Shown in pieces: positions 49,313 to 64,000 of a stretch of DNA of 64,000 nt. A program made the translations under genes and the position numbers. The DNA is taken from NCBI GenBank assembly GCA_038496445.1, contig JALMLS010000368.1, positions 62,001 through 126,000 of the forward strand, written 5' to 3'. The notes beneath the pieces were generated by a model, which worked only from the letters and a program-made list of their open reading frames with translations, ran no database searches and had not been told where the DNA came from. How positions within the stretch are numbered: the first letter of the stretch is position 1; every line of letters starts with the position of its first letter. The DNA is from Trichosphaerium sp. ATCC 40318 (Eukaryota; Protista; Tubulinea).

Positions 49313-50452
49313 TTAAAACAATGAAAAAAAGCTTTGCTTTTTTTTAAGTGCTAAAGCCCAGTCGCAACGCGGTTTAATAGTACACCCATCTTCTATAATG
49401 TCAATCGCAAAACTTCCAGCAAACATGACTGTATCATATTTAGTACCATTATCATCAACTACAACAGGTACAGTACAATAACCAGGGGTTATTTTAGACA
49501 AGTCAATAATAGGCCAATCAGATGTGATACTTAAACACCATGTCTTTTCAGATTTATTATCTCCTCGCCATATGCCGTCCTCGTCAAACGCGCAAAACAC
49601 TGTTACCCATCCACTTAAGAATGAAGGACCACTACCGCCTGCATGGCGATCACAAATGGTATTCCAAAATTTGAGATTTGGTTTTCCGGATGAAGCAGCA
49701 ACAAGTTCATCCAAAATAGGCGATAATAAGTCGTGCCACTTTTTCATTATTTTCTTATCTGAAACCTCGAATTCAAGCAGTTTATCAATCTTTTGTCGTA
49801 GCTTGATATAATCCTCAGGTGTACCAAGAAGAGTGATATTAGGAATGCCACAATCGAGGCAAAATTCATAAGAGAAATATTTCTGCATGCTTGCCATTAA
49901 GAGAACTGACGCTACTACCTTATCTGTCGGTGTTGTTGTTGTAAACTCTGGAATAACCCAAGAGCGTATTTGGTCGTCCTTCAAGTTTTTTTGCATTTCA
50001 ACTGTCATTGCTTTGGCTAATCCAGCGTAATTTGCTGTTCTAAGTGTTCCACCAGCGGTGACAACGAGTTTCTTCTTTCCAGAATGCGACACAAATTTAT
50101 CGCGTAGTGTTTCGGCGTTAGCGTTGACGTAGAGGCTGAATTGGTTTAGTATTGCCGTCCAAAAGTCGTCTGGGCGTAGAACAATATTGTGGTGATAGCA
50201 GTACGCGTCAACGATCGAGCTAACGAAGCCGTTGTTCTTCATGGCCCTAGCAGTAGGTTTTTTGGCTTCTTCAGAGCATTGAAGCACCTCCTGAAGAGGT
50301 ACGTAATCTTTGTGGCTTTTAATCTGTTTATCGCCTGCGTTACCTTGTACATACTCTTTCAAGCTAATAACGACATTGCGAAGACCAGGTGCGGTATTAG
50401 GTATCCGCACTGCTGTAGGTTTTGTATCTGCCGGCTGAAAGGTTGTGGACAT
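49313..50452 (-). CDS. DUF4419 family protein (intronless)
   Basis: NGFV...[60 protein letters not shown]. Confidence 0.88.
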
Positions 50453-50569
50453 GTCGTTCAAGTGCAGAAGTTGTAAATATGGAACACAAAAGACAAGCAT
50501 TCCGTTAAACCGAGAACCAAAATAACAACGTGTTGCATAAAAAAAACATCAAGAAACAAGCTTTGTTCA

Positions 50570-51395: not shown

Positions 51396-54300
51396 TTAAA
51401 ATCCAAAGTCAGCGCCATTGATAGTATGGCTAAACGGAGAACCTTTACAGTTGTGTCCGTTAATCTTAACTTCAATTTTATATTTGCCAGGCTCAGCATC
51501 ATAAGAAATCTCGTAGGTGCCATCTTCGTTATCGATGATATCACGTGCCAATGGTCCCTCAGGACCAAGAACACTAATTTCGACAATATCACCTCCGGTA
51601 GGAACTTGTTTTCCCTTCTTTGTGCGTGCAAGTACTTTGATTGAAACGCTTTGTTCAACAGAAAAGTCTGAGAATCCAGCGTCAGCACCGTCTTTAACAT
51701 CAACAGTGTAAGGAGATTCCTAAAGAAAAGGAGTCAGTTTAAGGAACAATTTGTTTTAAAAAAAGGGGTCATGTTAACGTACAGCTACGGTATCATCTCC
51801 AAGAGCTACAGCAATCTCGATTGGACCAACAGTAGTTGGTGTGTAAGGAACAGTATAGGTTCCATCCAAATTATCAATGACATCAACAGGTTCGTCATCA
51901 ATGGTAACGTTGAATGGAGATCCTCCCTTTTTGGTTGGGTTTCCAGCGCCATCCTTTGCTTTAATCTTAAGCTTGAGAGGCACATTTTGTTTTGCCTTAG
52001 CAGGCAGCTTGACTTTAGATTGTTCAGGGTCTACGTCAACAACATCAAGCTCAATTGGTTCACCAACTGGTGTATCGCCAAGCATGAGTTGAGCCTTAAT
52101 CGGCTTATCTGCATCTTTAGGTGCTTTCAATTCACCTTCGAAGACGCCAGGTTTGTCATCGACAGGCTCCATGCTGATAGGGTCTAAATCGCATGGACCA
52201 TCAAGAGCAATGGTCAACAAATCTGTAGGTAAATCTACAGGGTCTTCATTGATATCATCGACTTTGACCAAGATTGGGCTTGTCTTCTTTGGAACAAGAC
52301 CTGGTCTTGACACAAGGGATACCTTGAGGTCTTCAGGTTCTAATATCACGTGTTAGTATAAAAATCAAACAGCACAATAAGGGTACGTACTTGGAATAGC
52401 AGTAAAGGTCTTTGGAGAGTCACCAATATGATCTCCCGGTGTTGTATCAGGAACTGGTTCCTTGGCTTTTGGCTCATCGGTTGTTGCAGGAGCATCAGTG
52501 GCATCAGGATCTTTAGCCTTATTAACAATATCGTCTACTAGATCAGCAATATCATCTTTGAGCTCTTTGGTTTTAGGGTCGTCTCCAGCCTTTTTGGCGT
52601 CTTCCAAGTCATCGAGTTTATCCAAAAGATCTTTAGCTTCATCGACAGCATCGGAAGGAAGAACTCCAGTACTGAGTAAGTCAAGTAGAGGATCTTTCAA
52701 CTTATCAGCATCATCAGCAAGAGTGTCAACTGGCTTATCACCATCAACATCTTTTCCGAGTTTGTCCATTGCGTTTTCAAGGTCATCAACAGCATCATCT
52801 GGGTTCTTGGCATCAACTGGTTTTGCCTGTTTAAACAGTTAGATAACAATGTCAGCATTGATAACAAAAGTACCTTGTCAAGAATATCATCAATAAGATC
52901 AGCAATCTCGTCTTTGAGTTGTTTGACCTTTGGTTCATCGCCAGCTTTCTTGGCTTCATCCAAATCATCAAGTTTCTTCAAAGCATCATTGGCTGCGTCA
53001 ACAACATCAGATGGAAGTACTCCAGTCTTGATCGCGTCATCGAGAGCGTCTTTGAGCTTGTCAGTATCGGCAGAGATGGTGTCGAGTGGTTCATCAGCAT
53101 CAACGTCTTTGGATAATTTATCCATTGCATCGGCGATATTGAGAGGAGGACAATCTTTAGCCTAAAATAAAGTTAATACGCCAATAATCAACATGGTATT
53201 TTTACCTTTTTGATGTCATCAATAAGGTCGGCAAGTTCATCTTTGAGCTCCTTGGTTTTTGGATCGTCACCAGCTTCCTTGGCATCTTCCAAGTCATAGA
53301 GTTTGTCCAAAGCTTCTTTGACTTTATCAACAACGTCAGAAGGCAGAACGCCAGTGCTGAGTAAATCAAGAAGAGGATCTTTCAACTTATCAGCATCGTC
53401 TGAGATGGTGTCAACTGGTTCATCAGCATCAACATCTTTGCCGAGTTTGTCCATTGCTTTATCGATATCATCCAAAGCATCAAGACCTTTCTTGGTGGCT
53501 GGTTTGACCTGAGAATGTAATTTTAGTAAAAATGTTGCACAGGTTCAAATGTACCTTATCAGCGATATCATCAATGAGGTCAGCGAGTTCATCTTTGAGT
53601 TGTTTAACCTTTGGTTCATCGCCAGCCTTTTTAGCATCCTCCAAGTCATCAAGCTTATCTAAAGCTTCCTTGACTTTATCAACAACGTCACATGGAAGAT
53701 CTCCAGCACTGAGCAAGTCAAGTAGAGGGTCTTTCAACTTGTCAGCATCATCTGAAATTGTATCGAGTGGTTCATCAGCATCGACGTCTTTTCCGAGTTT
53801 GTCCATTGCTTTTTCGAGGTCATCTAAAGCATCACCAACATTTTTCTTGTTTGCAGGCTTTGCCTATTAAGGTTTTAGAACAATATTCATAACCGTGAAA
53901 TTGCTTGGAACATACCTTATCAACAATATCATCAACAATGTCGTCAATCTCGTCCTTGAGTTGTTTGACCTTTGGTTCATCACCAGCTTTCTTGGCTTCA
54001 TCCAAGTCGTCAAGCTTCTTCAAAGCATCATTGGCTTCATCAACAACATCAGTTGGAAGTACACCAGCCTTGATTGCATCGTTGAGAGCGTCTTTGAGCT
54101 TGTCAGTATCATCAGAGATGACATCGATTGGCTTATCAGCATCAACGTCCTTTGAAAGTTTATCCATTGGATCAGCAACACTAACAGGTGGACACTCTTT
54201 AGCCTAAAGCAGTTGTTAAGTTTTAAAGATTGAATCATTTTTGTACCTTTTTGCCAATATCGTCTATGAGGTCTGCAAGTTCATCTTTGAGCTGTTTGAC

Positions 54301-57300
54301 CTTTGGTTCATCACCGGCTTTCTTGGCATCTTCCAAGTCATCAAGTTTGTCCAATGCTTCTTTGACTTTGTCAACAACGTCAGAAGGCAGAACGCCAGTG
54401 CTGAGTAAGTCGAGAAGAGGATCTTTCAACTTGTCAGCATCGTCAGAGATTGTATCAAGTGGAGCATCAGTGTCAACATCTTTGCCGAGTTTGTCCATTG
54501 CTTTATCGATGTCATCAAGAGCATCCAAAGCCTTTTTGGCATCAGCAGGCTTGTCATTACCACCAACATTGTCGCTTGGTTTGGCCTATATCATTTTTTA
54601 GTATTTGCAGCACAATTGCATATGTTACCTTGTCAAGAATGTCTGCAACAAGATCGTCAACCTCATCCTTGAGTTGCTTAACCTTTGGTTCGTCACCAGC
54701 CTTTTTGGCATCTTCCAAATCATCGAGTTTATCCAATACTTCTTTGACTTTATCGACTGCATCAGATGGAAGAACTCCAGTGCTGAGTAAGTCGAGAAGA
54801 GGATCTTTCAACTTATCAGCATCATCTGAAAGAGTGTCAAGCGGTTTATCGCCATCAACATCTTCTCCAAGTTTATCCATTGCCTTTTCAACATCGTTGG
54901 CTGCTTTATCAGCATCTTTGGTGTCTTCAGGCTTGTTCTAGGGTAGTGTTAGGTGCTGTTTCGGAAAGCGATATCGTGTACCTTATCGAGGACATCACTA
55001 ACAATATCATCAATCTCGTCCTTGAGTTGTTTGACCTTTGGTTCGTCACCAGCTTTCTTGGCTTCATCCAAATCATCAAGTTTTTTCAAAGCATCATTGG
55101 CTTCATCAACAACATCAGATGGAAGTACTCCAGTCTTGATTGCATCATTGAGAGCATCTTTGAGCTTGTCAGTGTCATCAGAGATTACATCAATTGGCTT
55201 ATCAGCATCGATGTCTTTTGATAGTCTATCCATTGCATCAGCAATACCGACTGAAGGATTCTTCTTTGTCTGAGAAAATCAGTTAGCATTTGATCAATAA
55301 AAATAGAAAATGTACCTTATCAACAATATCATCAACGAGAGCCGCAAGTTCGTCTTTGAGTTGTTTGACCTTTGGTTCATCACCGGCCTTTTTGGCATCT
55401 TCCAAATCACCGAGTTTGTCCAAAGCTTCTTTGACTTTGTCAACAACGTCAGATGGAAGTACACCAGTGCTGAGTAAGTCAAGTAGAGGATCTTTCAACT
55501 TATCAGCATCATCAGAGATTGTGTCGACTGGCTCATCAGCATCAACATCCTTTCCGAGTTTATCCATTGCCTTTTCAATATCATTAAGAGCGTCAACTGC
55601 TTTTTTGGTGTCATCGCCCTTGTCGCTGCCATCTTCTGGTTTTTTAGTACTAGCAGGTTTGGCATCCGTCTTGGTCTTAAATCAAGTTAGTTACTTTACT
55701 ATGGGTACACAAAAATACCTTATCGACAATATCATCAATAGCATCAGCGAGGTCATCTTTGAGCTGTTTGGTTTTTGGCTCATCACCAGCCTTTTTGGCT
55801 TCATCCAAATCATCAAGCTTTTTCAAAGCATCATTGGCTGCATCAACAACATCAGATGGAAGTACTCCAGTCTTGATTGCGTCATTGAGAGCGTCTTTGA
55901 GCTTGTCAGTGTCATCAGAGATAACATCGAGTGGTTTATCAGCATCAACATCTTTGGATAATTTATCCATTGCATCAGCAAGGCTATCGACTGGATCGAC
56001 ATTTGATTTGGCCTGTATAATTTTTAGTAACGCTAACTTGTGTAGTCTAAGTACCTTGTTAAGAATGTCATCAATGAGATCAGCAACTTCATCCTTGAGT
56101 TGTTTGACCTTTGGTTCATCACCAGCCTTTTTAGCATCTTCCAAATCATCGAGTTTATCCAATACTTCTTTGACTTTATCGACTGCATCAGATGGAAGAA
56201 CTCCAGTACTGAGTAAGTCGAGGAGAGGATCTTTCAACTTATCAGCATCGTCTGAGAGAGTGTCAAGCGGTTTATCGCCATCAACATCTTCTCCAAGTTT
56301 ATCCATTGCCTTTTCAACATCGTTGGCTGCTTTATCAGCATCTTTGGTGTCTTCAGGCTTGTTCTAAGAATACGTTAGAAGTTGTGTAGATGGCAAAAAA
56401 TAAAGTAAATCGAGTACCTGGGCGAGGATATCATCAACTGGATCAGCAATCTCATCTTTGAGCTGTTTGACCTTTGGTTCATCACCAGCTTTCTTTGGCT
56501 TCATCCAAGTCATCAAGTTTCTTCAAAGCATCATTGGCTGCATCTACAACATCAGATGGAAGTACTCCAGTCTTGATTGCATCGTTGAGAGCATCTTTGA
56601 GCTTGTCAGTATCGCCAGAGATGGTGTCAAGCGGTTTATCAGCATCAACATCTTTGGACAATTTATCCATTGCATCAGCAATACCGACTGAAGGATTCTT
56701 CTTTGTCTGAGAATCCAGTTAGAGTTTGATAATAAAATAAGAAAGTGTACCTTATCGACAATGTCGTCAATGAGTGCTGCAAGTTCGTCTTTGAGTTGTT
56801 TGACCTTTGGTTCATCGCCGGCCTTTTTGGCATCTTCCAAATCACCAAGTTTGTCCAAAGCTTCTTTGACTTTGTCGACAACATCAGAAGGAAGAACACC
56901 AGTGCTGAGCAAGTCGAGAAGTGGATCTTTCAACTTATCAGCATCATCTGAGATCGTGTCAAGTGGTTCATCAGCATCAACATCTTTGCCGAGTTTATCC
57001 ATTGCTTTTTCAATATCATTAAGAGCGTCAACTGCTTTTTTGGCATTATCGGCGTTGTTATCAGGTGCGTCGTTTTCTTGAGAATCATCTGGAGACAATT
57101 TGATAGATATTTCAGTCTTACCAGGGTTCTCAGGAGTAAATTCACCAGCGTATGTGCCATCACCTTTGTCCTCGAGAGGAGTAGCGACACCATCAAGAGT
57201 AACAACAAAGTTATCACCACCTGACGTTCTTGGCTTGCCTTCATCATCCTTTGCAATTACAACAAAAGGGAAAGGTTTGCCAACAATGACAAGTGAAAAG

Positions 57301-60300
57301 TCTGCTGGTTGGATCTCGCAGTTCGCAGGATTGGTAGGAGCAGTAATAATAAGCTCAAGTTTTGGTAGCAATACTGTGACACCAAGCTTGAACTCAAGAA
57401 CAAGAGTTCCGATTACAGTTGGTGTGAACACAATGTCTACCTTACCATCGCCAACAGGTGATAGTTCAACAGGACACTTTTGTTCCTTCTAGGCACGTGG
57501 GTAAGTCATATGTTTCAACAAGGTAAACAAAGGGCGTACACCATCTGGTCCAACAATTATGAGTACAACAACTGGACAGTAATCGTCGAGAGGAGAACCT
57601 TCTTCATCCTCAAGAGTAAGCGTCATTTTAACTGGTTTGTCAACAACGCCACCCTTGTCACCGTCTAATGGACAAGGTGTTTTAATGGATGGTTCAGCTA
57701 TTAATGCAATTAGAAGAGTGGACAAAGAACTAAGCAAAGATATTCGTACGCAAACATTTAACTGAAACTGGTGCTTCAGCTGGCATATCATACACCTTCA
57801 AATCGAGTGGAAGATCTCCGTCATCCTTTGGCGTAAAGGAACATTTGAATACACCATCTTCTTCGACAACATCGACATCAATAGGATTTCCATCGGCGTC
57901 TGATAACAACATTAGTCAGGATTATACTCTAAAAATCACGAAATTAACTACGAACCTTTAATGGCAGCTGCAATAGCCTCTGCAGGGATGGCAGAGACGG
58001 CTTCACCATCAGCATCTCTACAAGCAACTGTAAACTCTACAGGTTGCCCAGCGAGAATAGGACAATCAATGCCAGGTCCTTCAACTGTAATGTCAAATGG
58101 AGTCTCAGGCTTAATAAATCCTTCCCATGGAGAGTTCTTGATTGGTTCGCCACCCTTAAATGTGACTACAATAACGATCTTGGCTGGTTTCGTTGGTGTA
58201 AAGGTAACAACGTAGATACCAGTATTGTCATCCACAATGTTAGAGTCAATAAGACCCTCCTCTTCACTCTTGATTGTAACATCAAACAGAGCACCACCAA
58301 CAGGTATTGGTTCGCCAGCAGCATCGCGAGTCTCAATCTTAAATGAAGCCTCTTTGCCAGCAGTAGGGCATTCAAGGACCTCTAATGAGGTTGTAGCTTC
58401 AGTTGGACCTACACAATCGTCAATAACGTGAAAACTAATTATCCTGTAAAAACCAAAAAACACGTGCCTTCAACAATCTTCAAGAGAACAGGTTCATCTT
58501 GAATTGGTTTTCCGTATGCTTTAATTACGACAGTGTAATCGCCAGGTTTATCTACGTTGTATGTGATAGGGTATTGAGCTTCTTCATCCTTGGAAGGTAG
58601 CACTTCGCCTTCTGACTTTTCACCATCTGGACCAGTCAAGATAACATCAATTTTATCGTCGTCCATTTGGAATGCTTCTCCTTCTGGAGTAGTACACTTA
58701 AGTAAAGCGAGAACGACTTGAACATTTGTGATGCCAGGGTTCTTGAGGTCAACCAACTCGTATTTCGAACCAAATGGAGGACCACCGTCAGGTAAGACGT
58801 CGAATTCCACTGGTTGTTCAAAGATTGGCTTGTCGAACACTTTAATAGAAACTTCGTATGTTCCAGGTACTTCAATGTTGTACATGACAGCTACAGTGCC
58901 AGGTGTTTCACCAACACCAAACTCCATGTCAAGTTCCAAAGCATCAACTCTTCCCTGCAAAGATATCAGAAAAATGTAGTGCGGAAAAATGTAAAATGGT
59001 AAATATCAAACGTACGCTTAAAGAGGAAGGTTCTAGTGGGAACATTTCACCTTTGGAGTCACAGCACATGATGTAACCGATAGTGTTGTCGACATTAGCA
59101 GTGCCTTCAGTATCAAGATCCATAATGACAAACGTGGCGCCTTGTGGGGCACCAATGGTAACAGTAATTGGAATGCAATCACTCACGTTTAAGCCGAATG
59201 CATCAACGCTCAGCTTGTAGTCGCCTACAGTGTCTGGCGTGTACCTTATCTCAACGCCATCGTCCTTATCAACGAGTTCTACTTCAACATCACCAGGACC
59301 AAAGAAATCTACTTCGATAGCATTGGCCTCAAATTCTTTGACAGGTTCACCGTCTTTGTCTAGGCATTGGAGGACACCATAAACATTTGGCAAATTGACA
59401 GACCCTTCATTGTTTTCATCAGCATATTTAAATCCGAAATCAGTTGGTGGGCTTGCAGGTTTATCTAGACATAACTTAGTAAACAGTTCACCATAATAAA
59501 AAAGTTGGTGGTACCGTATGATGTTGTAGTGAATGGAGAATCTTTAATCGGTTCGCCAGCAAGCTGGACATCGATTGTATGTGGTCCTTTCTCCTTAGGC
59601 TCATAGGTGACATCGTATGTGCCATCGTCATTGTCTTCAACGGTTGCAGGTACATCAATACCTTGAGGTCCTTTGATAGCAACTGTGAAGCAATCGCCGC
59701 CAGTTGGGATTGGCTCATCTTGAATGTCCTTTGCCTTTACAATGAATGCAACAGGCTTATCAACTGGAGAGGCTTTCAAGCCAGGGCCATCAACAGTACA
59801 GTTTTCAGGTGAAGCCTTAGGACATACTTCAACCTTGAACGGTGCCTTGTCAATTGACTCATCGCGAACGAGTACGTCAACAGAGACTTCGGTGCAGTCC
59901 TTTGGAGTATACTCTGCGGTGTATGTACCATCACCATTGTCAGTGACATTGCAATCGACTGGGTTCTCTACAGCATCTTCAGGTGAAGTTACAGGAGCAT
60001 CAACGCCAGAGTCTTGCACGCCTTTAAGGGCATTTTTGACTTTATCAGCAGTAGCTGCAACGTCTTCTGGGGTGCCAGAATCTGCAACTTTAGAAAGAGC
60101 GTCAGCAGCGGCAACTAGATCATCAGCTGCTTTAACAGCCTTCTTGGAGTCTTCAGGACTCTCTACACGGACAGCAGCTGATTTAGCCTACAGAAATATT
60201 AGAACAAACTAGCAAAGTGTAAGGACATACCTTTTGGGCAATATCATCAATGAGATCCTCGAGTTCATCCTTCAACTGTTTGACTTGAGGTTTTTTGCCT

Positions 60301-63300
60301 GCTTTTTTAGCAGCATCTAAATCATCAACCTTTTTCAAGGCATCGTCGATCAATTCAGAGAGTGGCTTTGGTGTAAAGTCATCGGCAACGTCCTTGAGTG
60401 CATCTTTCAAGTTTGCAACTTGGGCGGACACATCATCAGCAGGTGCATCATCAACTGCTTTTGACAGCTTGTCCATTGCCTTGGCGAGCTTTTTGGATTT
60501 TGTTGGAGGTTTTTTGTCTGCAGGTTCTTTTACCTAAAATATATGGTCAGTTTGGACATAGTAACAACAAATCTTATATCGTACAGCATTGACAACATCG
60601 TCAACAAGTTCTTTAACATTGTCCTTCAACTTTTTGGTCTTTGGCTCATCACCGGCCTTTTTGGCATCCTCCAAGTCATCGAGTTTATCCAAAGCTTCTT
60701 TGGCTTCGTTGGCAACATCGGATGGGAGTACTCCAGCATTGAGAGAATCAAGAAGTGCATCTTTGAGCTTGTCAGTATCACCAGAGATGGTATCAACATC
60801 GACTGGTTCGGCTGCATCAACATCTGTAGACAATTTGTCCATTGCGCTATCGAGATTATCAGCAATACCAGCAGATTTCTTGTCATCAGATGGTGTAGCC
60901 TAAAGTCAAATTAGTCGGCTTCAGATTTGAAAGTAAAGTATATTACCTCATCAGCTACGCCAGGTACAATGTCGTCAAGGTCATCCTTGAGTTGTTTGAC
61001 CTTTGGTTCGTCACCAGCCTCCTTGGCTTCCTTCAAGTCATCAAGTTTCTTCAAAGCATCGTTGGCTTCATCAACAACGTCAGTTGGAAGTACACCAGCC
61101 TTGATTGCATCATTGAGAGCATCCTTGAGCTTATCAGTATCATCAGAGATGACATCAAGTGGTGCGTCAGCATCAACGTCTTTGGCGAGCTTATCTTGAG
61201 CAGCTGCGATCTTGCAAGGGAGGGTGTCCTTTGTCTAGTGAAAGTGTTATTAGCTTGTTAATAAAGTTGCACATTGAGCCTACCTTGTCAGCAATATCCT
61301 TAACAAGCTTGTTGAGGTCATCCTTCAACTCTTTTACTTTTGGATCATCTCCAGCACGCTTAGCTTTTTCAATATCATCAAGTTTCTTCAAAGCTTCCTT
61401 TGCTTGATCGACAACATCAGATGGAAGTACTCCAGCGCTCAATGCATCAAGAAGTGCATCTTCAACGTTGTCAACATCATTGACAAGCGTTTTTAGTGGC
61501 ACATCAGCGTCGACATCCTTTGAAAGCTTGTCAGCTAGTTTCTCGAGTTCGTCAACAGCGTCAAGAGTTTTATCAGGACCAGATTGATGTTTTGCCTGTG
61601 CACCAAAATATTAGTACAAGTGTTGCTTAACATAACAGGTAAAAAGATTGAAACGTACTTTGTTAGCAACATCATGAACAAGTGGTTTTACTTCATCACA
61701 GAGTTTCTTGACTTGTGGCTCATCTCCAGCTTTCTTGGCGAGTTCCAAATCTGTAAGTTTGTTTAAAGCATCATTGGCTTCATCAACAAGATCGGAAGGA
61801 AGTACACCGGCCTTAAGCGTATCTTTGATGGCATCCTTGACGTTATCGCAATCATTTGCAATAGTATCAAGAGGAGCGTCAGAGTCAACGTCTTTTGACA
61901 GTTTATCCATTGCCTTACCAGCATCAACTGGCTCTGCAACTTTAGACTAGGTATAAACGTGAGCATGTGATTTGATTTCAAATTAAAAATGTTACCTTGT
62001 CAGCAAGATCGCTAACAATGTCTTTGAGTTCATCCTTTAGTGTTTTGGCTTTGTCAGCATCACCAGCCTTCTTTGCTTCTTCCAATTCATCGAGCTTTTT
62101 GGCAGCCTTCTTGGCTTGTTCTGCAACAGGATTTGTAGCCTTTCCAGTATTTTTACCGGTGACCTTGACATCAATATCGTCTCCACCAGAAGTGATTGGT
62201 TTACCATCTTTGTCAACAGCTTGTACGTTAATTGTCGTTGGTTCACCAGCTACGGCGCCTTCAATACCAGGACCTGATACTTCACAGGTTGTTTTATCAG
62301 CAGCTAGTAGTAAGTATAAGGAATACGCCTGGAATGATCAAAGTCGTACGTAGCCTGACATCGAGTTTAATAGGATCGCCAACAGGTTGACCATTGATAG
62401 TCAATTGACCTTCGTATGGACCCAGATTTTCAGGTTTGAACTCCAAGAGGAATTCATTATCAACTCCTGACTCGGATGGACGAATAGTTGCTTCTAATGG
62501 AGGATCACCTTCTAGAGTGCAAGCAAGCATGTCACTTGGGATTTCAAGTTTGTCCTCAGGTGCCTCGTCAGCAGGAGGTACACCTGCATCAAGCAAGTCT
62601 TTGAGGGCATCTTTGAGAGTATCTGTATCTCCAACAATGGCATCGAGTGGAGCATCACTATCGATATCCTTGTCAAGTTGGTCTTTTGCCTTGTCAAGAC
62701 TATCCAAAGCATCAAGCGATTTCTTAGGATCGTATGGCTTGTCGCTCTTTTTAGCCTGTACAAAAATGTTATTATGGCTTATAAATATGCTGTCGTGCAG
62801 TACCTTATCAGCAATATCATCAATGAGTCAGCAAGTTCATCTTTAAGCTGTTTGACCTTTGGTTCATCACCTGCCTTTTTGGCGTCTTCCAAGTCATCGA
62901 GTTTGTCCAAAGCATCGTTTAGTGTATCAACAACGTCGGATGGAAGAACTCCAGTATTGAGCAAGTCAAGTAGCGAGTCCTTCAACTTGTCAGCATCATC
63001 AGATATTGTGTCAAGCGGCTCATCGCCATCAACATCCTTTCCGAGTTTATCCATTGCCTTTTCAAGGTCATCAACAGCATCAACTGGGTTCTTGGCATCA
63101 ACTGGTTTTGCCTGTTTTAAACAGTTAGATAACAATGTCAGCATTGATAACAAAAGTACCTTGTCAAGAATATCATCAATAAGATCAGCAATCTCGTCTT
63201 TGAGTTGTTTGACCTTTGGTTCATCACCAGCTTTCTTGGCTTCATCCAAATCATCAAGTTTCTTCAAAGCATCATTGGCTGCGTCAACTACATCAGATGG

Positions 63301-64000
63301 AAGTACTCCAGTCTTGATTGCATCGTTGAGAGCGTCTTTGAGCTTGTCAGTATCACCAGAGATGGTGTCGAGTGGTTCATCAGCATCAAGATCTTTGGAT
63401 AATTTATCCATTGCATCGGCGATATTGAGAGGAGGACAATCTTTAGCCTAAAATAAACAGTGTTACAAAAGTTGACAACAAAAAAACTTTACCTTTTTGA
63501 TGTCGTCAATGAGATCTGCAAGTTCATCTTTGAGCTCTTTGACCTTTGGTTCATCGCCGGCCTTTTTGGCATCTTCCAAGTCATCGAGTTTGTCCAAAGC
63601 TTCTTTGACTTTATCAACAACGTCAGAAGGCAGAACGCCAGTGCTGAGTAAGTCAAGAAGAGGATCTTTCAACTTATCAGCATCGTCTGAGATAGTATCA
63701 AGTGGAGCATCAGTGTCAACATCTTTGCCGAGTTTGTCCATTGCTTTATCAAGGTCGTCAAGAGCATCAAGACCTTTCTTGGTGGCTGGTTTGACCTGAG
63801 AATGTAATTTTAGTAAAAAAGGTTGCACAGTTCAAACGTACCTTATCAGCGATATCATCAATGAGATCAGCGAGTTCATCTTTGAGTTGTTTAACCTTTG
63901 GTTCATCACCGGCTTTTTTGGCATCCTCCAAGTCATCGAGTTTGTCCAAAGCTTCTTTGATCTTCTCAAGAACGTCAGATGGAAGATCTCCAGCACTGAG
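51396..64000 (-). CDS. Giant filamin/ABP-120-like protein, 3' portion (5' end beyond window): filamin Ig repeats plus arrays of an acidic helical repeat
   Basis: Filamin motifs GPG, GGD, DNxDGTYxVxYxP, GxPIKDSPF. The final repeat resembles the ABP-120 dimerisation repeat. Stop at 51396. Confidence 0.92.
52440..57095 (-). repeat. Array of 13 ~95-aa helical repeats, one per exon
   Basis: Units MDKL(G/S)KDVDAD.P.D.ISDD(A/T)DKLKD...GVLPSDVVD...LDDL.(D/E)AKKAGDEPKVKQLKDE, separated by short (~40-55 nt) introns. Confidence 0.92.
59980..62150 (-). repeat. Array of 5 diverged helical repeats flanked by two half-repeats
   Basis: Exons ~60231-61947 encode diverged units. Half-units lie at ~62150-61996 and ~60187-60000. 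Confidence 0.85.
62570..64000 (-). repeat. Third helical-repeat array (continues beyond window)
   Basis: Three complete units, one unit cut by the window edge and one half-unit. 63075-63905 is nearly identical to 52790-53620, introns included. Confidence 0.9.

What the first reader, a model, noticed from the sequence alone, without database searches (positions are those of the whole stretch)
52390..62755. Filamin Ig domains split by huge helical-repeat inserts: a possible 'latch and hidden length' cytoskeletal protein
Seen in sequence: the helical repeats sit inside individual filamin domains rather than between them. (1) Strands A-F (TNPANCEI...TSGGDNFVVTL..DKGDGTYAGEFTPENPGKTEISIKL, ~57340-57095) are followed by 13 repeats (~1,350 aa). 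Only then comes the missing last strand, GDHIGDSPKTFTAIP (~52440-52390). (2) Strands A-C (TCEVSGPGIEGAVAGEPTTINVQAVDKDGKPITSGGDDIDVKVTG, ~62290-62155) are followed by ~600 aa of repeats, then the rest of the domain (PVDCNVTDNGDGTYTAEYTP...IDKAPFKVEV, ~59965-59825). (3) The third array runs directly into a domain that begins at about strand C (IPSDMLACTLEG...GQPVGDPIKLDV, ~62550-62355). Established: filamin repeats are ~100-aa beta-sandwiches ending in a GxHIxGSPF-type strand and are normally contiguous. Inference: each split Ig domain could clamp a long loop of helical bundles that is released under force, or display it as a side arm. I know of no described filamin with this layout.
Basis: partly seen in the sequence, partly recalled or inferred. 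Interest (0 to 1): 0.92.

Follow-up and report, generated by a model that had tools for sequence, protein, structure and literature searches.

The report
Filamin domains interrupted by helical-bundle arrays
One giant amoeba gene encodes a filamin-like rod in which two, and probably three, of the small beta-sandwich domains are cut open in surface loops and carry long strings of a lineage-specific acidic four-helix bundle; this is an extreme natural case of one domain nested in another, and whether it works as a mechanical latch is untested.

Summary
Window 51399-64000 (minus strand) is the 3' part (at least 3,692 aa, 32 exons, 44-64 nt GT-AG introns) of one gene.

- **Junctions.** Four junction exons each carry a filamin piece and a helical piece in one open frame.
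- **Complementary halves.** Pfam Filamin matches stop at profile 82/93 (domain 1) and 59/93 (domain 2). The second half of domain 2 covers 48-93. On Dictyostelium ddFLN4 the domain 2 halves map to residues 8-51 and 54-100. With a filamin HMM built only from other organisms, the joined halves score as single full domains: 97 and 66 bits, against 63-118 for intact neighbours.
- **Inserts.** They hold 5 whole repeats plus two half repeats, and 13 whole repeats. AlphaFold predicts each repeat as an up-down four-helix bundle (pLDDT 86), whose ends should lie together and so suit a loop insert.
- **New.** Array 2 starts with helices 3-4 and ends with helices 1-2, halves that could close the loop.
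- **Selection.** The repeats are under purifying selection (dN/dS 0.15) and have almost no relatives in 1.8 billion proteins.

Domain insertion is common, and filamin C domain 20 carries a 78-aa insert, so this is a new variant, not a new kind. The latch function, cis folding and transcripts remain untested. The scan noted this repeat on the same stretch (s1-397297), not on other DNA.

The parts
62561..64000 (-). Array 3 (partial; continues beyond the window). It has 3.5 full helical repeats plus a terminal half repeat (helices 1-2, model aa 363-418).
   Evidence: Repeat HMM coordinates. Colinear with the end of array 1 at 89.4% nucleotide identity.
62351..62560 (-). Ig piece S3C: strands C-G of a filamin-like domain, directly after the half repeat in the same exon. 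Its strands A-B are not in the window.
   Evidence: Own-gene HMM positions 42-100 of 104; 35% identity to residues 27-100 of the intact domain at 52038-52337. Weak Pfam Filamin match 61-88/93.
62155..62303 (-). Split filamin domain 2, N half (strands A-C).
   Evidence: Pfam Filamin 3-59/93, 34 bits. ddFLN4 (1wlh_A) residues 8-51. Independent HMM positions 3-48.
59972..62154 (-). Array 2 (627 aa). It holds a half repeat with helices 3-4 (61996-62151), five full repeats (one per phase-0 exon), and a diverged half repeat with helices 1-2 (60002-60151).
   Evidence: Repeat HMM: aa 540-591 = positions 51-102; five full matches of 101-128 bits; aa 1106-1155 = positions 4-54.
59825..59971 (-). Split filamin domain 2, C half (strands D-G).
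   Evidence: Pfam Filamin 48-93/93, 44.9 bits. ddFLN4 residues 54-100. The joined halves score 97.2 bits over HMM 3-98.
57345..59824 (-). Seven uninterrupted filamin or filamin-like Ig domains.
   Evidence: Pfam Filamin matches. Gene model and own-gene alignment.
57096..57344 (-). Split filamin domain 1, N part (strands A-F).
   Evidence: Pfam Filamin 2-82/93, 45.6 bits. ddFLN4 residues 22-83, E 3.7e-18 for the chain.
52440..57095 (-). Array 1 (1,367 aa): a 20-aa acidic linker, 13 full helical repeats, and a 26-aa Pro/Asp/Thr-rich linker.
   Evidence: Thirteen repeat HMM matches of 129-143 bits. Composition 30% D+E, net charge -189, one aromatic residue.
52392..52439 (-). Split filamin domain 1, G strand with the G-x-x-I-x-x-S-P motif. 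It splices straight into the next Ig domain.
   Evidence: It adds 12.9 bits and extends the match from HMM position 84 to 96. None of 200 shuffles and none of 450 insert 17-mers reach this score. Splice junction read.
51399..52339 (-). Three C-terminal uninterrupted Ig domains and the stop codon.
   Evidence: Pfam Filamin matches. Gene model.
62825..62826 (-). Frame break 1: one base missing relative to paralogous repeats, at a C-C step.
56493..56496 (-). Frame break 2: one extra A relative to paralogous repeats.

Best explanation
This is a nested-domain (domain-insertion) architecture.

**What it is.** A giant filamin-like rod protein has surface loops of individual Ig domains opened: the C-D loop of one, the F-G hairpin of another, and probably the B-C loop of a third. 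Each opened loop carries a string of small acidic four-helix bundles.

**How it most likely folds.**
- An up-down four-helix bundle begins and ends at the same end. A string of them can therefore hang from a loop like charms on a bracelet, without pulling the two Ig halves apart.
- The separated Ig pieces most likely reassemble within the same chain into complete seven-stranded filamin domains.
- In array 2 the loop is probably closed at its base as well. The first half repeat (helices 3-4) and the last half repeat (helices 1-2) would pack into one bundle.

**Likely consequence (inferred, not shown).**
- The arrays are shielded from tension that runs along the rod while the host Ig domains are folded.
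- They would be exposed to tension when a host domain opens. This would release roughly 230 nm (array 2) and 500 nm (array 1) of contour length.
- Until then they are free to act as side-arm binding or polyanionic modules.

**Shown.** One open frame across all four junction exons, complementary halves, the four-helix prediction, and purifying selection on the repeats.

**Inferred.** Reassembly in cis, closure of the half bundles, and any mechanical role.
For: - **Gene model.** 32 exons with no in-frame stop over 3,692 codons apart from two 1-nt indels.
- **Junction exons.** Ig and helical parts lie in the same frame.
- **Complementary Pfam ranges.** 2-82 for domain 1; 3-59 and 48-93 for domain 2.
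- **Complementary mapping on solved ddFLN4.** Residues 8-51 and 54-100.
- **Joined halves score as single full domains.**
  - Own-gene HMM: 62.1 and 55.2 bits.
  - HMM built from 22 filamin domains of other organisms: 97.2 and 66.1 bits. Intact domains of the same protein score 62.9-117.5.
- **All three breakpoints fall in loops.**
- **Repeat structure.** AlphaFold gives four helices (9-28, 33-53, 58-79, 83-102), pLDDT 86.1, pTM 0.72. The best structural matches are BRIL/cytochrome b562 and FAT-type bundles. BRIL is the bundle routinely engineered into receptor loops, as the listed entries show.
- **Complementary half repeats at the two ends of array 2.** HMM positions 51-102 and 4-54.
- **Selection.** dN/dS is 0.149 between array 3 and the end of array 1. 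Exons are 90% identical and introns 81%.
- **General rule.** Inserted domain families tend to have close termini (PMC13114784).
Against: - No structure of a complete split domain could be predicted. The halves are not contiguous, so no reference exists for them.
- No RNA and no orthologue is available. Neither the genome nor close relatives are in the protein library.
- A six-stranded Ig would have to wait for about 1,370 residues of translation before its G strand appears. That is extreme for a nested domain.
- The G-strand assignment rests on about 15 residues.
- The C-terminal half repeat of array 2 is weak, at 12.7 bits.
- The half repeats can also be paired differently. The end of array 3 could pair with the start of array 2.
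- The bundle register could be offset by half a repeat.
- Two frameshifts are present.
- The N-terminal partner of the third Ig piece is unseen.
Confidence: 0.6

Rival explanations
1. Complementation in trans. The incomplete Ig pieces are completed by the matching strands of a second molecule (strand or domain swap). On this reading the split domains are dimerisation or polymerisation joints, and the helical arrays are spacer rods between them.
For: - The G strand is an edge strand that can be donated from elsewhere.
- Incomplete Ig folds completed in trans are known: obscurin-like-1 Ig3 with the myomesin linker, chaperone-usher pili, and the filamin A 20-21 strand masking (PMC5222588).
- A 1,367-aa separation makes intermolecular capture kinetically plausible.
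- The halves are complementary. That fits cis and trans equally.
Against: - Bundles with adjacent termini, and the complementary half repeats at both ends of array 2, look built for closing the loop within one chain.
- The effective local concentration favours cis.
- No multimer prediction was possible.
Confidence: 0.15
2. Relics of repeat shuffling or of assembly. The half domains are debris of unequal recombination, deletion or mis-joins inside highly similar arrays. They do not fold, and the gene may be decaying.
For: - Two 1-nt frameshifts lie inside repeat exons.
- The arrays are 76-90% identical at the DNA level, so mis-joins inside them are conceivable.
- The third Ig piece has no visible partner.
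- No transcript or protein of this gene is in the libraries.
Against: - dN/dS is 0.149, and exons are better conserved than introns.
- All 31 introns keep GT-AG and the reading frame.
- The split halves are among the most canonical filamin sequences of the protein. Their breakpoints match to within a few positions, twice for the Ig domains and once for the bundle.
- The junctions lie in unique sequence, not inside repeats.
- Both broken exons are flanked by phase-0 introns, so skipping them keeps the frame.
Confidence: 0.12
3. Splice-regulated cassettes. The arrays are removed, or varied in length, by alternative splicing, so some isoforms carry contiguous filamin domains.
For: - Every internal repeat exon is flanked by phase-0 introns, and apart from the two exons carrying the 1-nt indels their lengths are multiples of three.
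- A GTAAAAAT at 62155 and an AG at 59975 are phase-compatible. Together they would excise array 2 exactly.
Against: - The introns of this gene are 44-64 nt, and a 2.2-kb intron would be out of character.
- No compatible pair of sites restores domain 1.
- The first and last helical units share exons with the Ig pieces, so simple exon skipping cannot remove them.
Confidence: 0.08

Closest known systems
Filamin C (gamma-filamin) Ig-like domain 20 with its muscle-specific insertion
   Same: A filamin Ig repeat interrupted in the middle by extra sequence encoded by its own exon, with the domain still functional (PMC2192634).
   Different: That insert is one stretch of 78 aa used for Z-disc targeting. 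Here the inserts are 627 and 1,367 aa of tandem folded four-helix bundles, in at least two domains of one protein.
Dictyostelium gelation factor (ddFLN/ABP-120) rod repeats, especially ddFLN4 (PDB 1KSR, 1WLH)
   Same: The closest solved relative of the Ig parts (E down to 3.7e-18). The B-C breakpoint of the third piece coincides with the A-B | C-G boundary of the ddFLN4 mechanical intermediate (PMC6754583).
   Different: ddFLN repeats are contiguous and carry no helical inserts.
Engineered domain-insertion (host-guest) proteins: GL5/I27 elastomers and BRIL loop fusions
   Same: A guest domain sits in a loop of a host domain. The guest feels force only after the host opens. A four-helix bundle with adjacent termini is the preferred guest (PMC5133956; Peng & Li 2009 as cited in PMC5222588; BRIL fusion entries).
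   Different: Those are artificial and carry a single guest. This one is natural and carries arrays of guests.
Talin rod / vinculin-type helical bundles
   Same: Small cytoskeletal helical bundles that unfold under low force and store length. The only significant sequence relative of the repeat is a vinculin/talin-like protein, P0002 (E 6.6e-7 in 1.8 billion proteins; hhalign probability 90%, 46% identity over 63 aa).
   Different: The match to talin-1 itself is not significant (E 0.37). The structural scores (Z about 11) are within the noise for helical bundles. Talin bundles are in line with the force path, not nested in a loop.
Ig folds completed by a donated strand (obscurin-like-1:myomesin; chaperone-usher pilins)
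   Same: An Ig-like fold lacking one strand is completed by a strand encoded elsewhere (PMC5222588).
   Different: There the donor is another protein. Here the missing strand lies on the same chain, 1,367 residues downstream.

Membership tests
Filamin/ABP280 repeat (Pfam PF00630) | Match to the family profile above the curated cut-off (26.9 bits) | tested here: met
   The N part of domain 1 scores 45.6 bits. The halves of domain 2 score 34.0 and 44.9 bits. Intact neighbours score 46.8-133.9 bits. The third piece alone scores only 12.6 bits.
Filamin/ABP280 repeat (Pfam PF00630) | One contiguous domain of about 93 positions covering strands A-G | tested here: not met
   For the split domains the profile coverage is broken at 82|83 and at about 50-59|48 by inserts of 1,367 and 627 aa. 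Coverage is complete only when the halves are joined.
Filamin protein family (actin cross-linker) | N-terminal tandem calponin-homology actin-binding domain | not testable with these tools
   The 5' end of the gene lies beyond window base 64000. No protein of this genome is in the libraries.
Filamin protein family (actin cross-linker) | Rod of tandem Ig repeats ending in a C-terminal repeat | tested here: met
   At least 13 Ig-like domains including the split ones. The last repeat ends at the stop codon, 51399.
Domain-insertion (nested domain, A1-B-A2) architecture | Two segments of one host domain separated by at least 30 residues that form another domain | tested here: met
   The host halves are complementary on Pfam, on ddFLN4 and on an independent HMM. 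The insert is predicted to fold. The criterion is taken from PMC13114784.
Domain-insertion (nested domain, A1-B-A2) architecture | Host halves physically reassemble into one fold | not testable with these tools
   The joined halves have no reference sequence, so they could not be handed to the structure predictor.
Talin/vinculin helical-bundle superfamily | Significant sequence or profile match to a family model | tested here: inconclusive
   The repeat has no Pfam family. Talin-1 scores E 0.37. A vinculin/talin-like protein, P0002, matches at E 6.6e-7 with hhalign probability 90%, but over helices 3-4 only.

The most novel reading that the evidence does not exclude
The split filamin domains are natural mechanical fuses. 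Each intact Ig domain carries the load and hides a loop of 6 to 13 weak four-helix bundles. When the host domain opens under force, up to about half a micrometre of chain per domain is paid out and can refold. At the B-C site the host opening would be the known early A-B detachment step. This would give an amoeboid cell a built-in, resettable, very large-strain shock absorber of a design so far known only from protein engineering.
Probability: 0.2. Interest if true: 0.85.

Novelty: new variant of a known kind. Interest (0 to 1): 0.62.

Why it matters
- **Mechanobiology.** Filamin, titin and talin are the textbook cases of how cells store length and sense force, and in all of them the modules are strung in series. 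A natural protein with weak helical bundles nested inside strong Ig domains would impose a fixed unfolding order, host first and guests after. That principle has been shown only in engineered host-guest elastomers.
- **Protein folding.** It would stretch the known limits of domain insertion. An Ig fold would have to complete itself after more than 1,300 intervening residues.
- **Protein design.** It would offer a natural scaffold for designers.
- **Testability.** The idea can be tested directly with recombinant fragments and single-molecule pulling.
- **If the mechanical idea is wrong.** The gene still documents a new orphan four-helix repeat, one repeat per phase-0 exon, and an unusually tidy case of nested modules.

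Tried and rejected
- **Relatives of the helical repeat.**
  - The profile search of 1.84 billion representatives gave 5 weak hits and no self or orthologue.
  - The metagenome scan gave nothing.
  - Pfam gave no family.
  - PDB sequences gave only E 0.018 or worse.
- **Orthologues or transcripts.** A search with junction exon 59516-60187 found nothing above 45% identity. The neighbouring DUF4419 gene also peaks at 52-55%. The genome and near relatives are therefore absent, and no RNA test was possible.
- **Talin or vinculin membership by structure.** Rejected as unproven. Z of about 11 lies within the helical-bundle background.
- **Precise excision of the arrays as giant introns.** A compatible pair of sites exists for array 2 only. 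It is probably chance.
- **G strand alone.** It was too short for Pfam and for PDB phmmer.
- **Mixed alignment for a second structure job.** MAFFT placed the filamin rows on the helical region. The alignment was discarded and the job was not run.
- **Joined halves or spliced split domains.** They were not sent to Pfam or AlphaFold. They have no reference, and typing them in was not appropriate. Local HMMs were used instead.
- **Circular permutant.** Reading the third Ig piece plus the next domain's A-C strands as a circularly permuted Ig was rejected. Strand C would be present twice, and the G-to-A linker has only about 6 residues.


Full report
**Gene**

The window has about 40% G+C. From 64000 down to 51399, the minus strand carries a chain of open frames separated by short GT-AG introns.

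A dynamic-programming splice model gives 32 exons and introns of 44-64 nt. The result is one reading frame of 3,692 codons that ends at a stop at 51399 and runs off the window at 64000. The 5' end is therefore unseen.

Two single-base indels break the frame inside repeat exons:
- At 62825-62826, one base is missing relative to all paralogous repeats.
- At 56493-56496, there is one extra A.

I read both with X. They may be assembly errors at short homopolymers, or they may be real. Both exons are flanked by phase-0 introns, so skipping either would keep the frame.

Earlier notes of this scan call the organism an amoeba. I could not name it. The neighbouring DUF4419 gene has at best 52-55% identity to anything in the protein collection.

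**The observation**

All four visible junctions lie inside single exons, so they do not depend on the splice model.

- Exon 56751-57488 matches Pfam Filamin at profile positions 2-82 of 93 (45.6 bits). It then continues through a 20-aa acidic linker into a helical repeat.
- Exon 61996-62301 matches Filamin 3-59, then becomes helical.
- Exon 59516-60187 starts helical, then matches Filamin 48-93 (44.9 bits when scanned alone), then holds a complete repeat.
- Exon 52392-52826 is a helical repeat, a 26-aa Pro/Asp/Thr-rich linker, and a 15-residue peptide with the G-x-x-I-x-x-S-P signature of the filamin last strand. It splices directly into the next Ig domain.

The closest solved relative is the Dictyostelium gelation factor rod. 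On chain 1wlh_A:
- the A-F piece covers residues 22-83;
- the A-C piece covers residues 8-51;
- the D-G piece covers residues 54-100 of the same domain, ddFLN4.

**Do the halves add up?**

I built two filamin HMMs that contain none of the split pieces. One came from ten intact domains of this gene. The other came from 22 domains of database proteins of other organisms.

| Piece | Independent HMM | Own-gene HMM |
|---|---|---|
| Domain 2, N half | 45.7 bits, positions 3-48 | 25.7 bits |
| Domain 2, C half | 46.9 bits, positions 53-98 | 34.0 bits |
| Domain 2, joined | 97.2 bits, positions 3-98 | 62.1 bits |
| Domain 1, A-F alone | 53.2 bits, positions 2-84 | 44.9 bits |
| Domain 1, A-F plus G strand | 66.1 bits, positions 2-96 | 55.2 bits |
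| Intact domains of the same protein | 62.9-117.5 bits | not scored |

For domain 1, 200 shuffled G strands reach at most 61.9 bits. All 450 other 17-mers of the insert reach at most 60.7 bits.

The third piece (62351-62560) aligns to positions 42-100 of the own-gene model. It also aligns to residues 27-100 of the intact paralogous domain at 52038-52337 (35% identity, E 7e-7). It therefore starts in the B-C loop and lacks strands A-B. Whether those strands sit upstream of array 3 cannot be seen from this window.

**The inserts**

Twenty repeats align with 62% mean column identity. There is one repeat per exon, all introns between them are phase 0, and apart from the two exons that carry the 1-nt indels the exon lengths are multiples of three.

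AlphaFold on this alignment gives four helices joined by 3-4-residue turns (pLDDT 86.1, pTM 0.72). The best structural matches are cytochrome b562/BRIL, PsbQ, de novo bundles and FAT domains. That is a generic up-down four-helix bundle, whose first and last residues lie at the same end. Many of the listed BRIL entries are fusions placed in receptor loops, which illustrates why such a bundle is a good loop insert.

The arrays are 24-30% Asp+Glu, carry about -14 net charge per repeat, and have one aromatic residue in 1,367 aa.

The repeat is nearly an orphan:
- A profile search of 1.84 billion representative proteins gave five weak hits.
- A metagenome scan gave none.
- Pfam gave no family.

The one meaningful relative is P0002, a 1,768-aa vinculin/talin-like protein from a sequencing-run assembly. 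It shares the helix 3-4 motif (hhalign probability 90%, 46% identity over 63 aa). Talin-1 itself is not significant (E 0.37). A talin/vinculin origin is therefore a lead and not a result.

**New observation**

Scanning the model protein with the repeat HMM gives the following:
- Array 1 has 13 complete repeats.
- Array 2 begins with a half repeat covering positions 51-102 (helices 3-4), has five complete repeats, and ends with a diverged half repeat covering positions 4-54 (helices 1-2).
- Array 3 also ends in a half repeat (positions 5-60), directly in front of the third Ig piece.

The two ends of array 2 are thus cut in the same helix 2-3 turn. Together they would make one bundle, which would bring the ends of the insert together exactly at the Ig loop.

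Two caveats apply:
- The same half repeats can be paired across the Ig pieces, with the end of array 3 pairing with the start of array 2. This is the reverse nesting.
- If the structural register were offset by half a repeat, array 2 would be six whole bundles, and array 1 would be the array with complementary loose ends. The conserved short turns within an exon, and the variable 8-25-aa linkers between exons, favour exon = bundle.

**Is it functional?**

The visible part of array 3 (64000-62803) is colinear with the end of array 1 (53713-52517) at 89.4% nucleotide identity, introns included. In that pair:
- exons are 90% identical and introns 81% identical;
- dS is 0.338, dN is 0.050, and dN/dS is 0.149 over 343 codons.

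That indicates purifying selection, not decay. The split Ig halves are among the most canonical filamin sequences of the protein. No further copies of either module occur elsewhere in the window.

**Mechanism**

The best-supported reading is domain insertion. The host Ig domains reassemble in cis, and the bundles hang from their loops.

This follows from four results:
- the halves are complementary;
- all three breakpoints lie in loops;
- the bundle has adjacent termini;
- array 2 has complementary half repeats at its ends.

It also agrees with the general finding that inserted families have close termini and that insertion is common (PMC13114784).

The mechanical consequence is an inference from topology. 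Tension along the rod passes from strand A to strand G of the host, so the insert is unloaded until the host opens. This hierarchy has been built artificially (GL5/I27, PMC5133956; Peng & Li 2009 as cited in PMC5222588).

The B-C breakpoint matches the A-B | C-G boundary of the ddFLN4 unfolding intermediate (PMC6754583). At that site an array would be exposed by the first, early step.

Rival readings are kept with lower weight:
- completion in trans, for which incomplete Ig folds completed by donated strands are a precedent (PMC5222588);
- non-folding relics or assembly artefacts;
- splice-regulated cassettes. A phase-compatible GTAAAAAT...AG pair would excise array 2 exactly, but it would make a 2.2-kb intron in a gene whose introns are about 50 nt.

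**Comparison and novelty**

A filamin repeat with an internal insert is known. Filamin C domain 20 carries 78 aa from an extra exon (PMC2192634). The kind is therefore known.

What I found no description of is tandem arrays of 6 and 13 folded modules nested in loops of at least two Ig domains of one protein, with a split bundle at the base (literature searches).

The scan had already noted the repeat itself on this same stretch (s1-397297). It had not noted it on other DNA.

**What could not be done**

- The joined halves, and a whole split domain with its insert, have no reference sequence.
- No RNA data was available.
- No upstream sequence was available.
- No orthologues were available.

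Noticed in passing
window 62825-62826 and 56493-56496 (-): Two single-base indels break the frame inside helical-repeat exons: one base missing and one extra A relative to all paralogous repeats. Both exons are flanked by phase-0 introns, so skipping them would keep the frame. They may be assembly errors or real.
   Followed up: partly
window 62155 and 59975 (-): A donor-like GTAAAAAT lies right after strand C, and an AG lies right before strand D. They are phase-compatible and would excise array 2 exactly, leaving a contiguous filamin domain. The same 8-mer is the donor of the real intron after exon 53206-53508. Probably chance, given introns of 44-64 nt.
   Followed up: partly
window 52440-57095, 59972-62154, 62561-64000 (-): The helical arrays are 24-30% Asp+Glu, carry about -14 net charge per repeat, and have one aromatic residue in 1,367 aa. 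The helix 1-2 turn is an Asp-rich D-V-D-A-D-E-P motif that might bind cations.
   Followed up: no
window 64000-62803 versus 53713-52517 (-): A 1.2-kb stretch of array 3 is colinear with the end of array 1, introns included, at 89.4% identity. This indicates a segmental duplication or gene conversion between arrays. Within array 1, repeat types recur in a higher-order pattern.
   Followed up: partly
L001 (Logan SRR5256710 contig, 5,380 nt), protein P0002 residues 720-860: A vinculin/talin-like protein from an unidentified sequencing run carries the only significant relative of the helical repeat, sharing the helix 3-4 motif. It may point to the origin of the repeat.
   Followed up: partly
window 49313-50500 (-): A single-exon DUF4419 gene lies just downstream. 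Its best database identity is only 52-55%, with relatives scattered over fungi, oomycetes, algae and an amoeba (Pelomyxa).
   Followed up: no
window 52340-52391 and other introns of the gene (-): Some of the short introns contain yeast-like branch-site motifs (TACTAAC/ACTAA) close to the acceptor.
   Followed up: no
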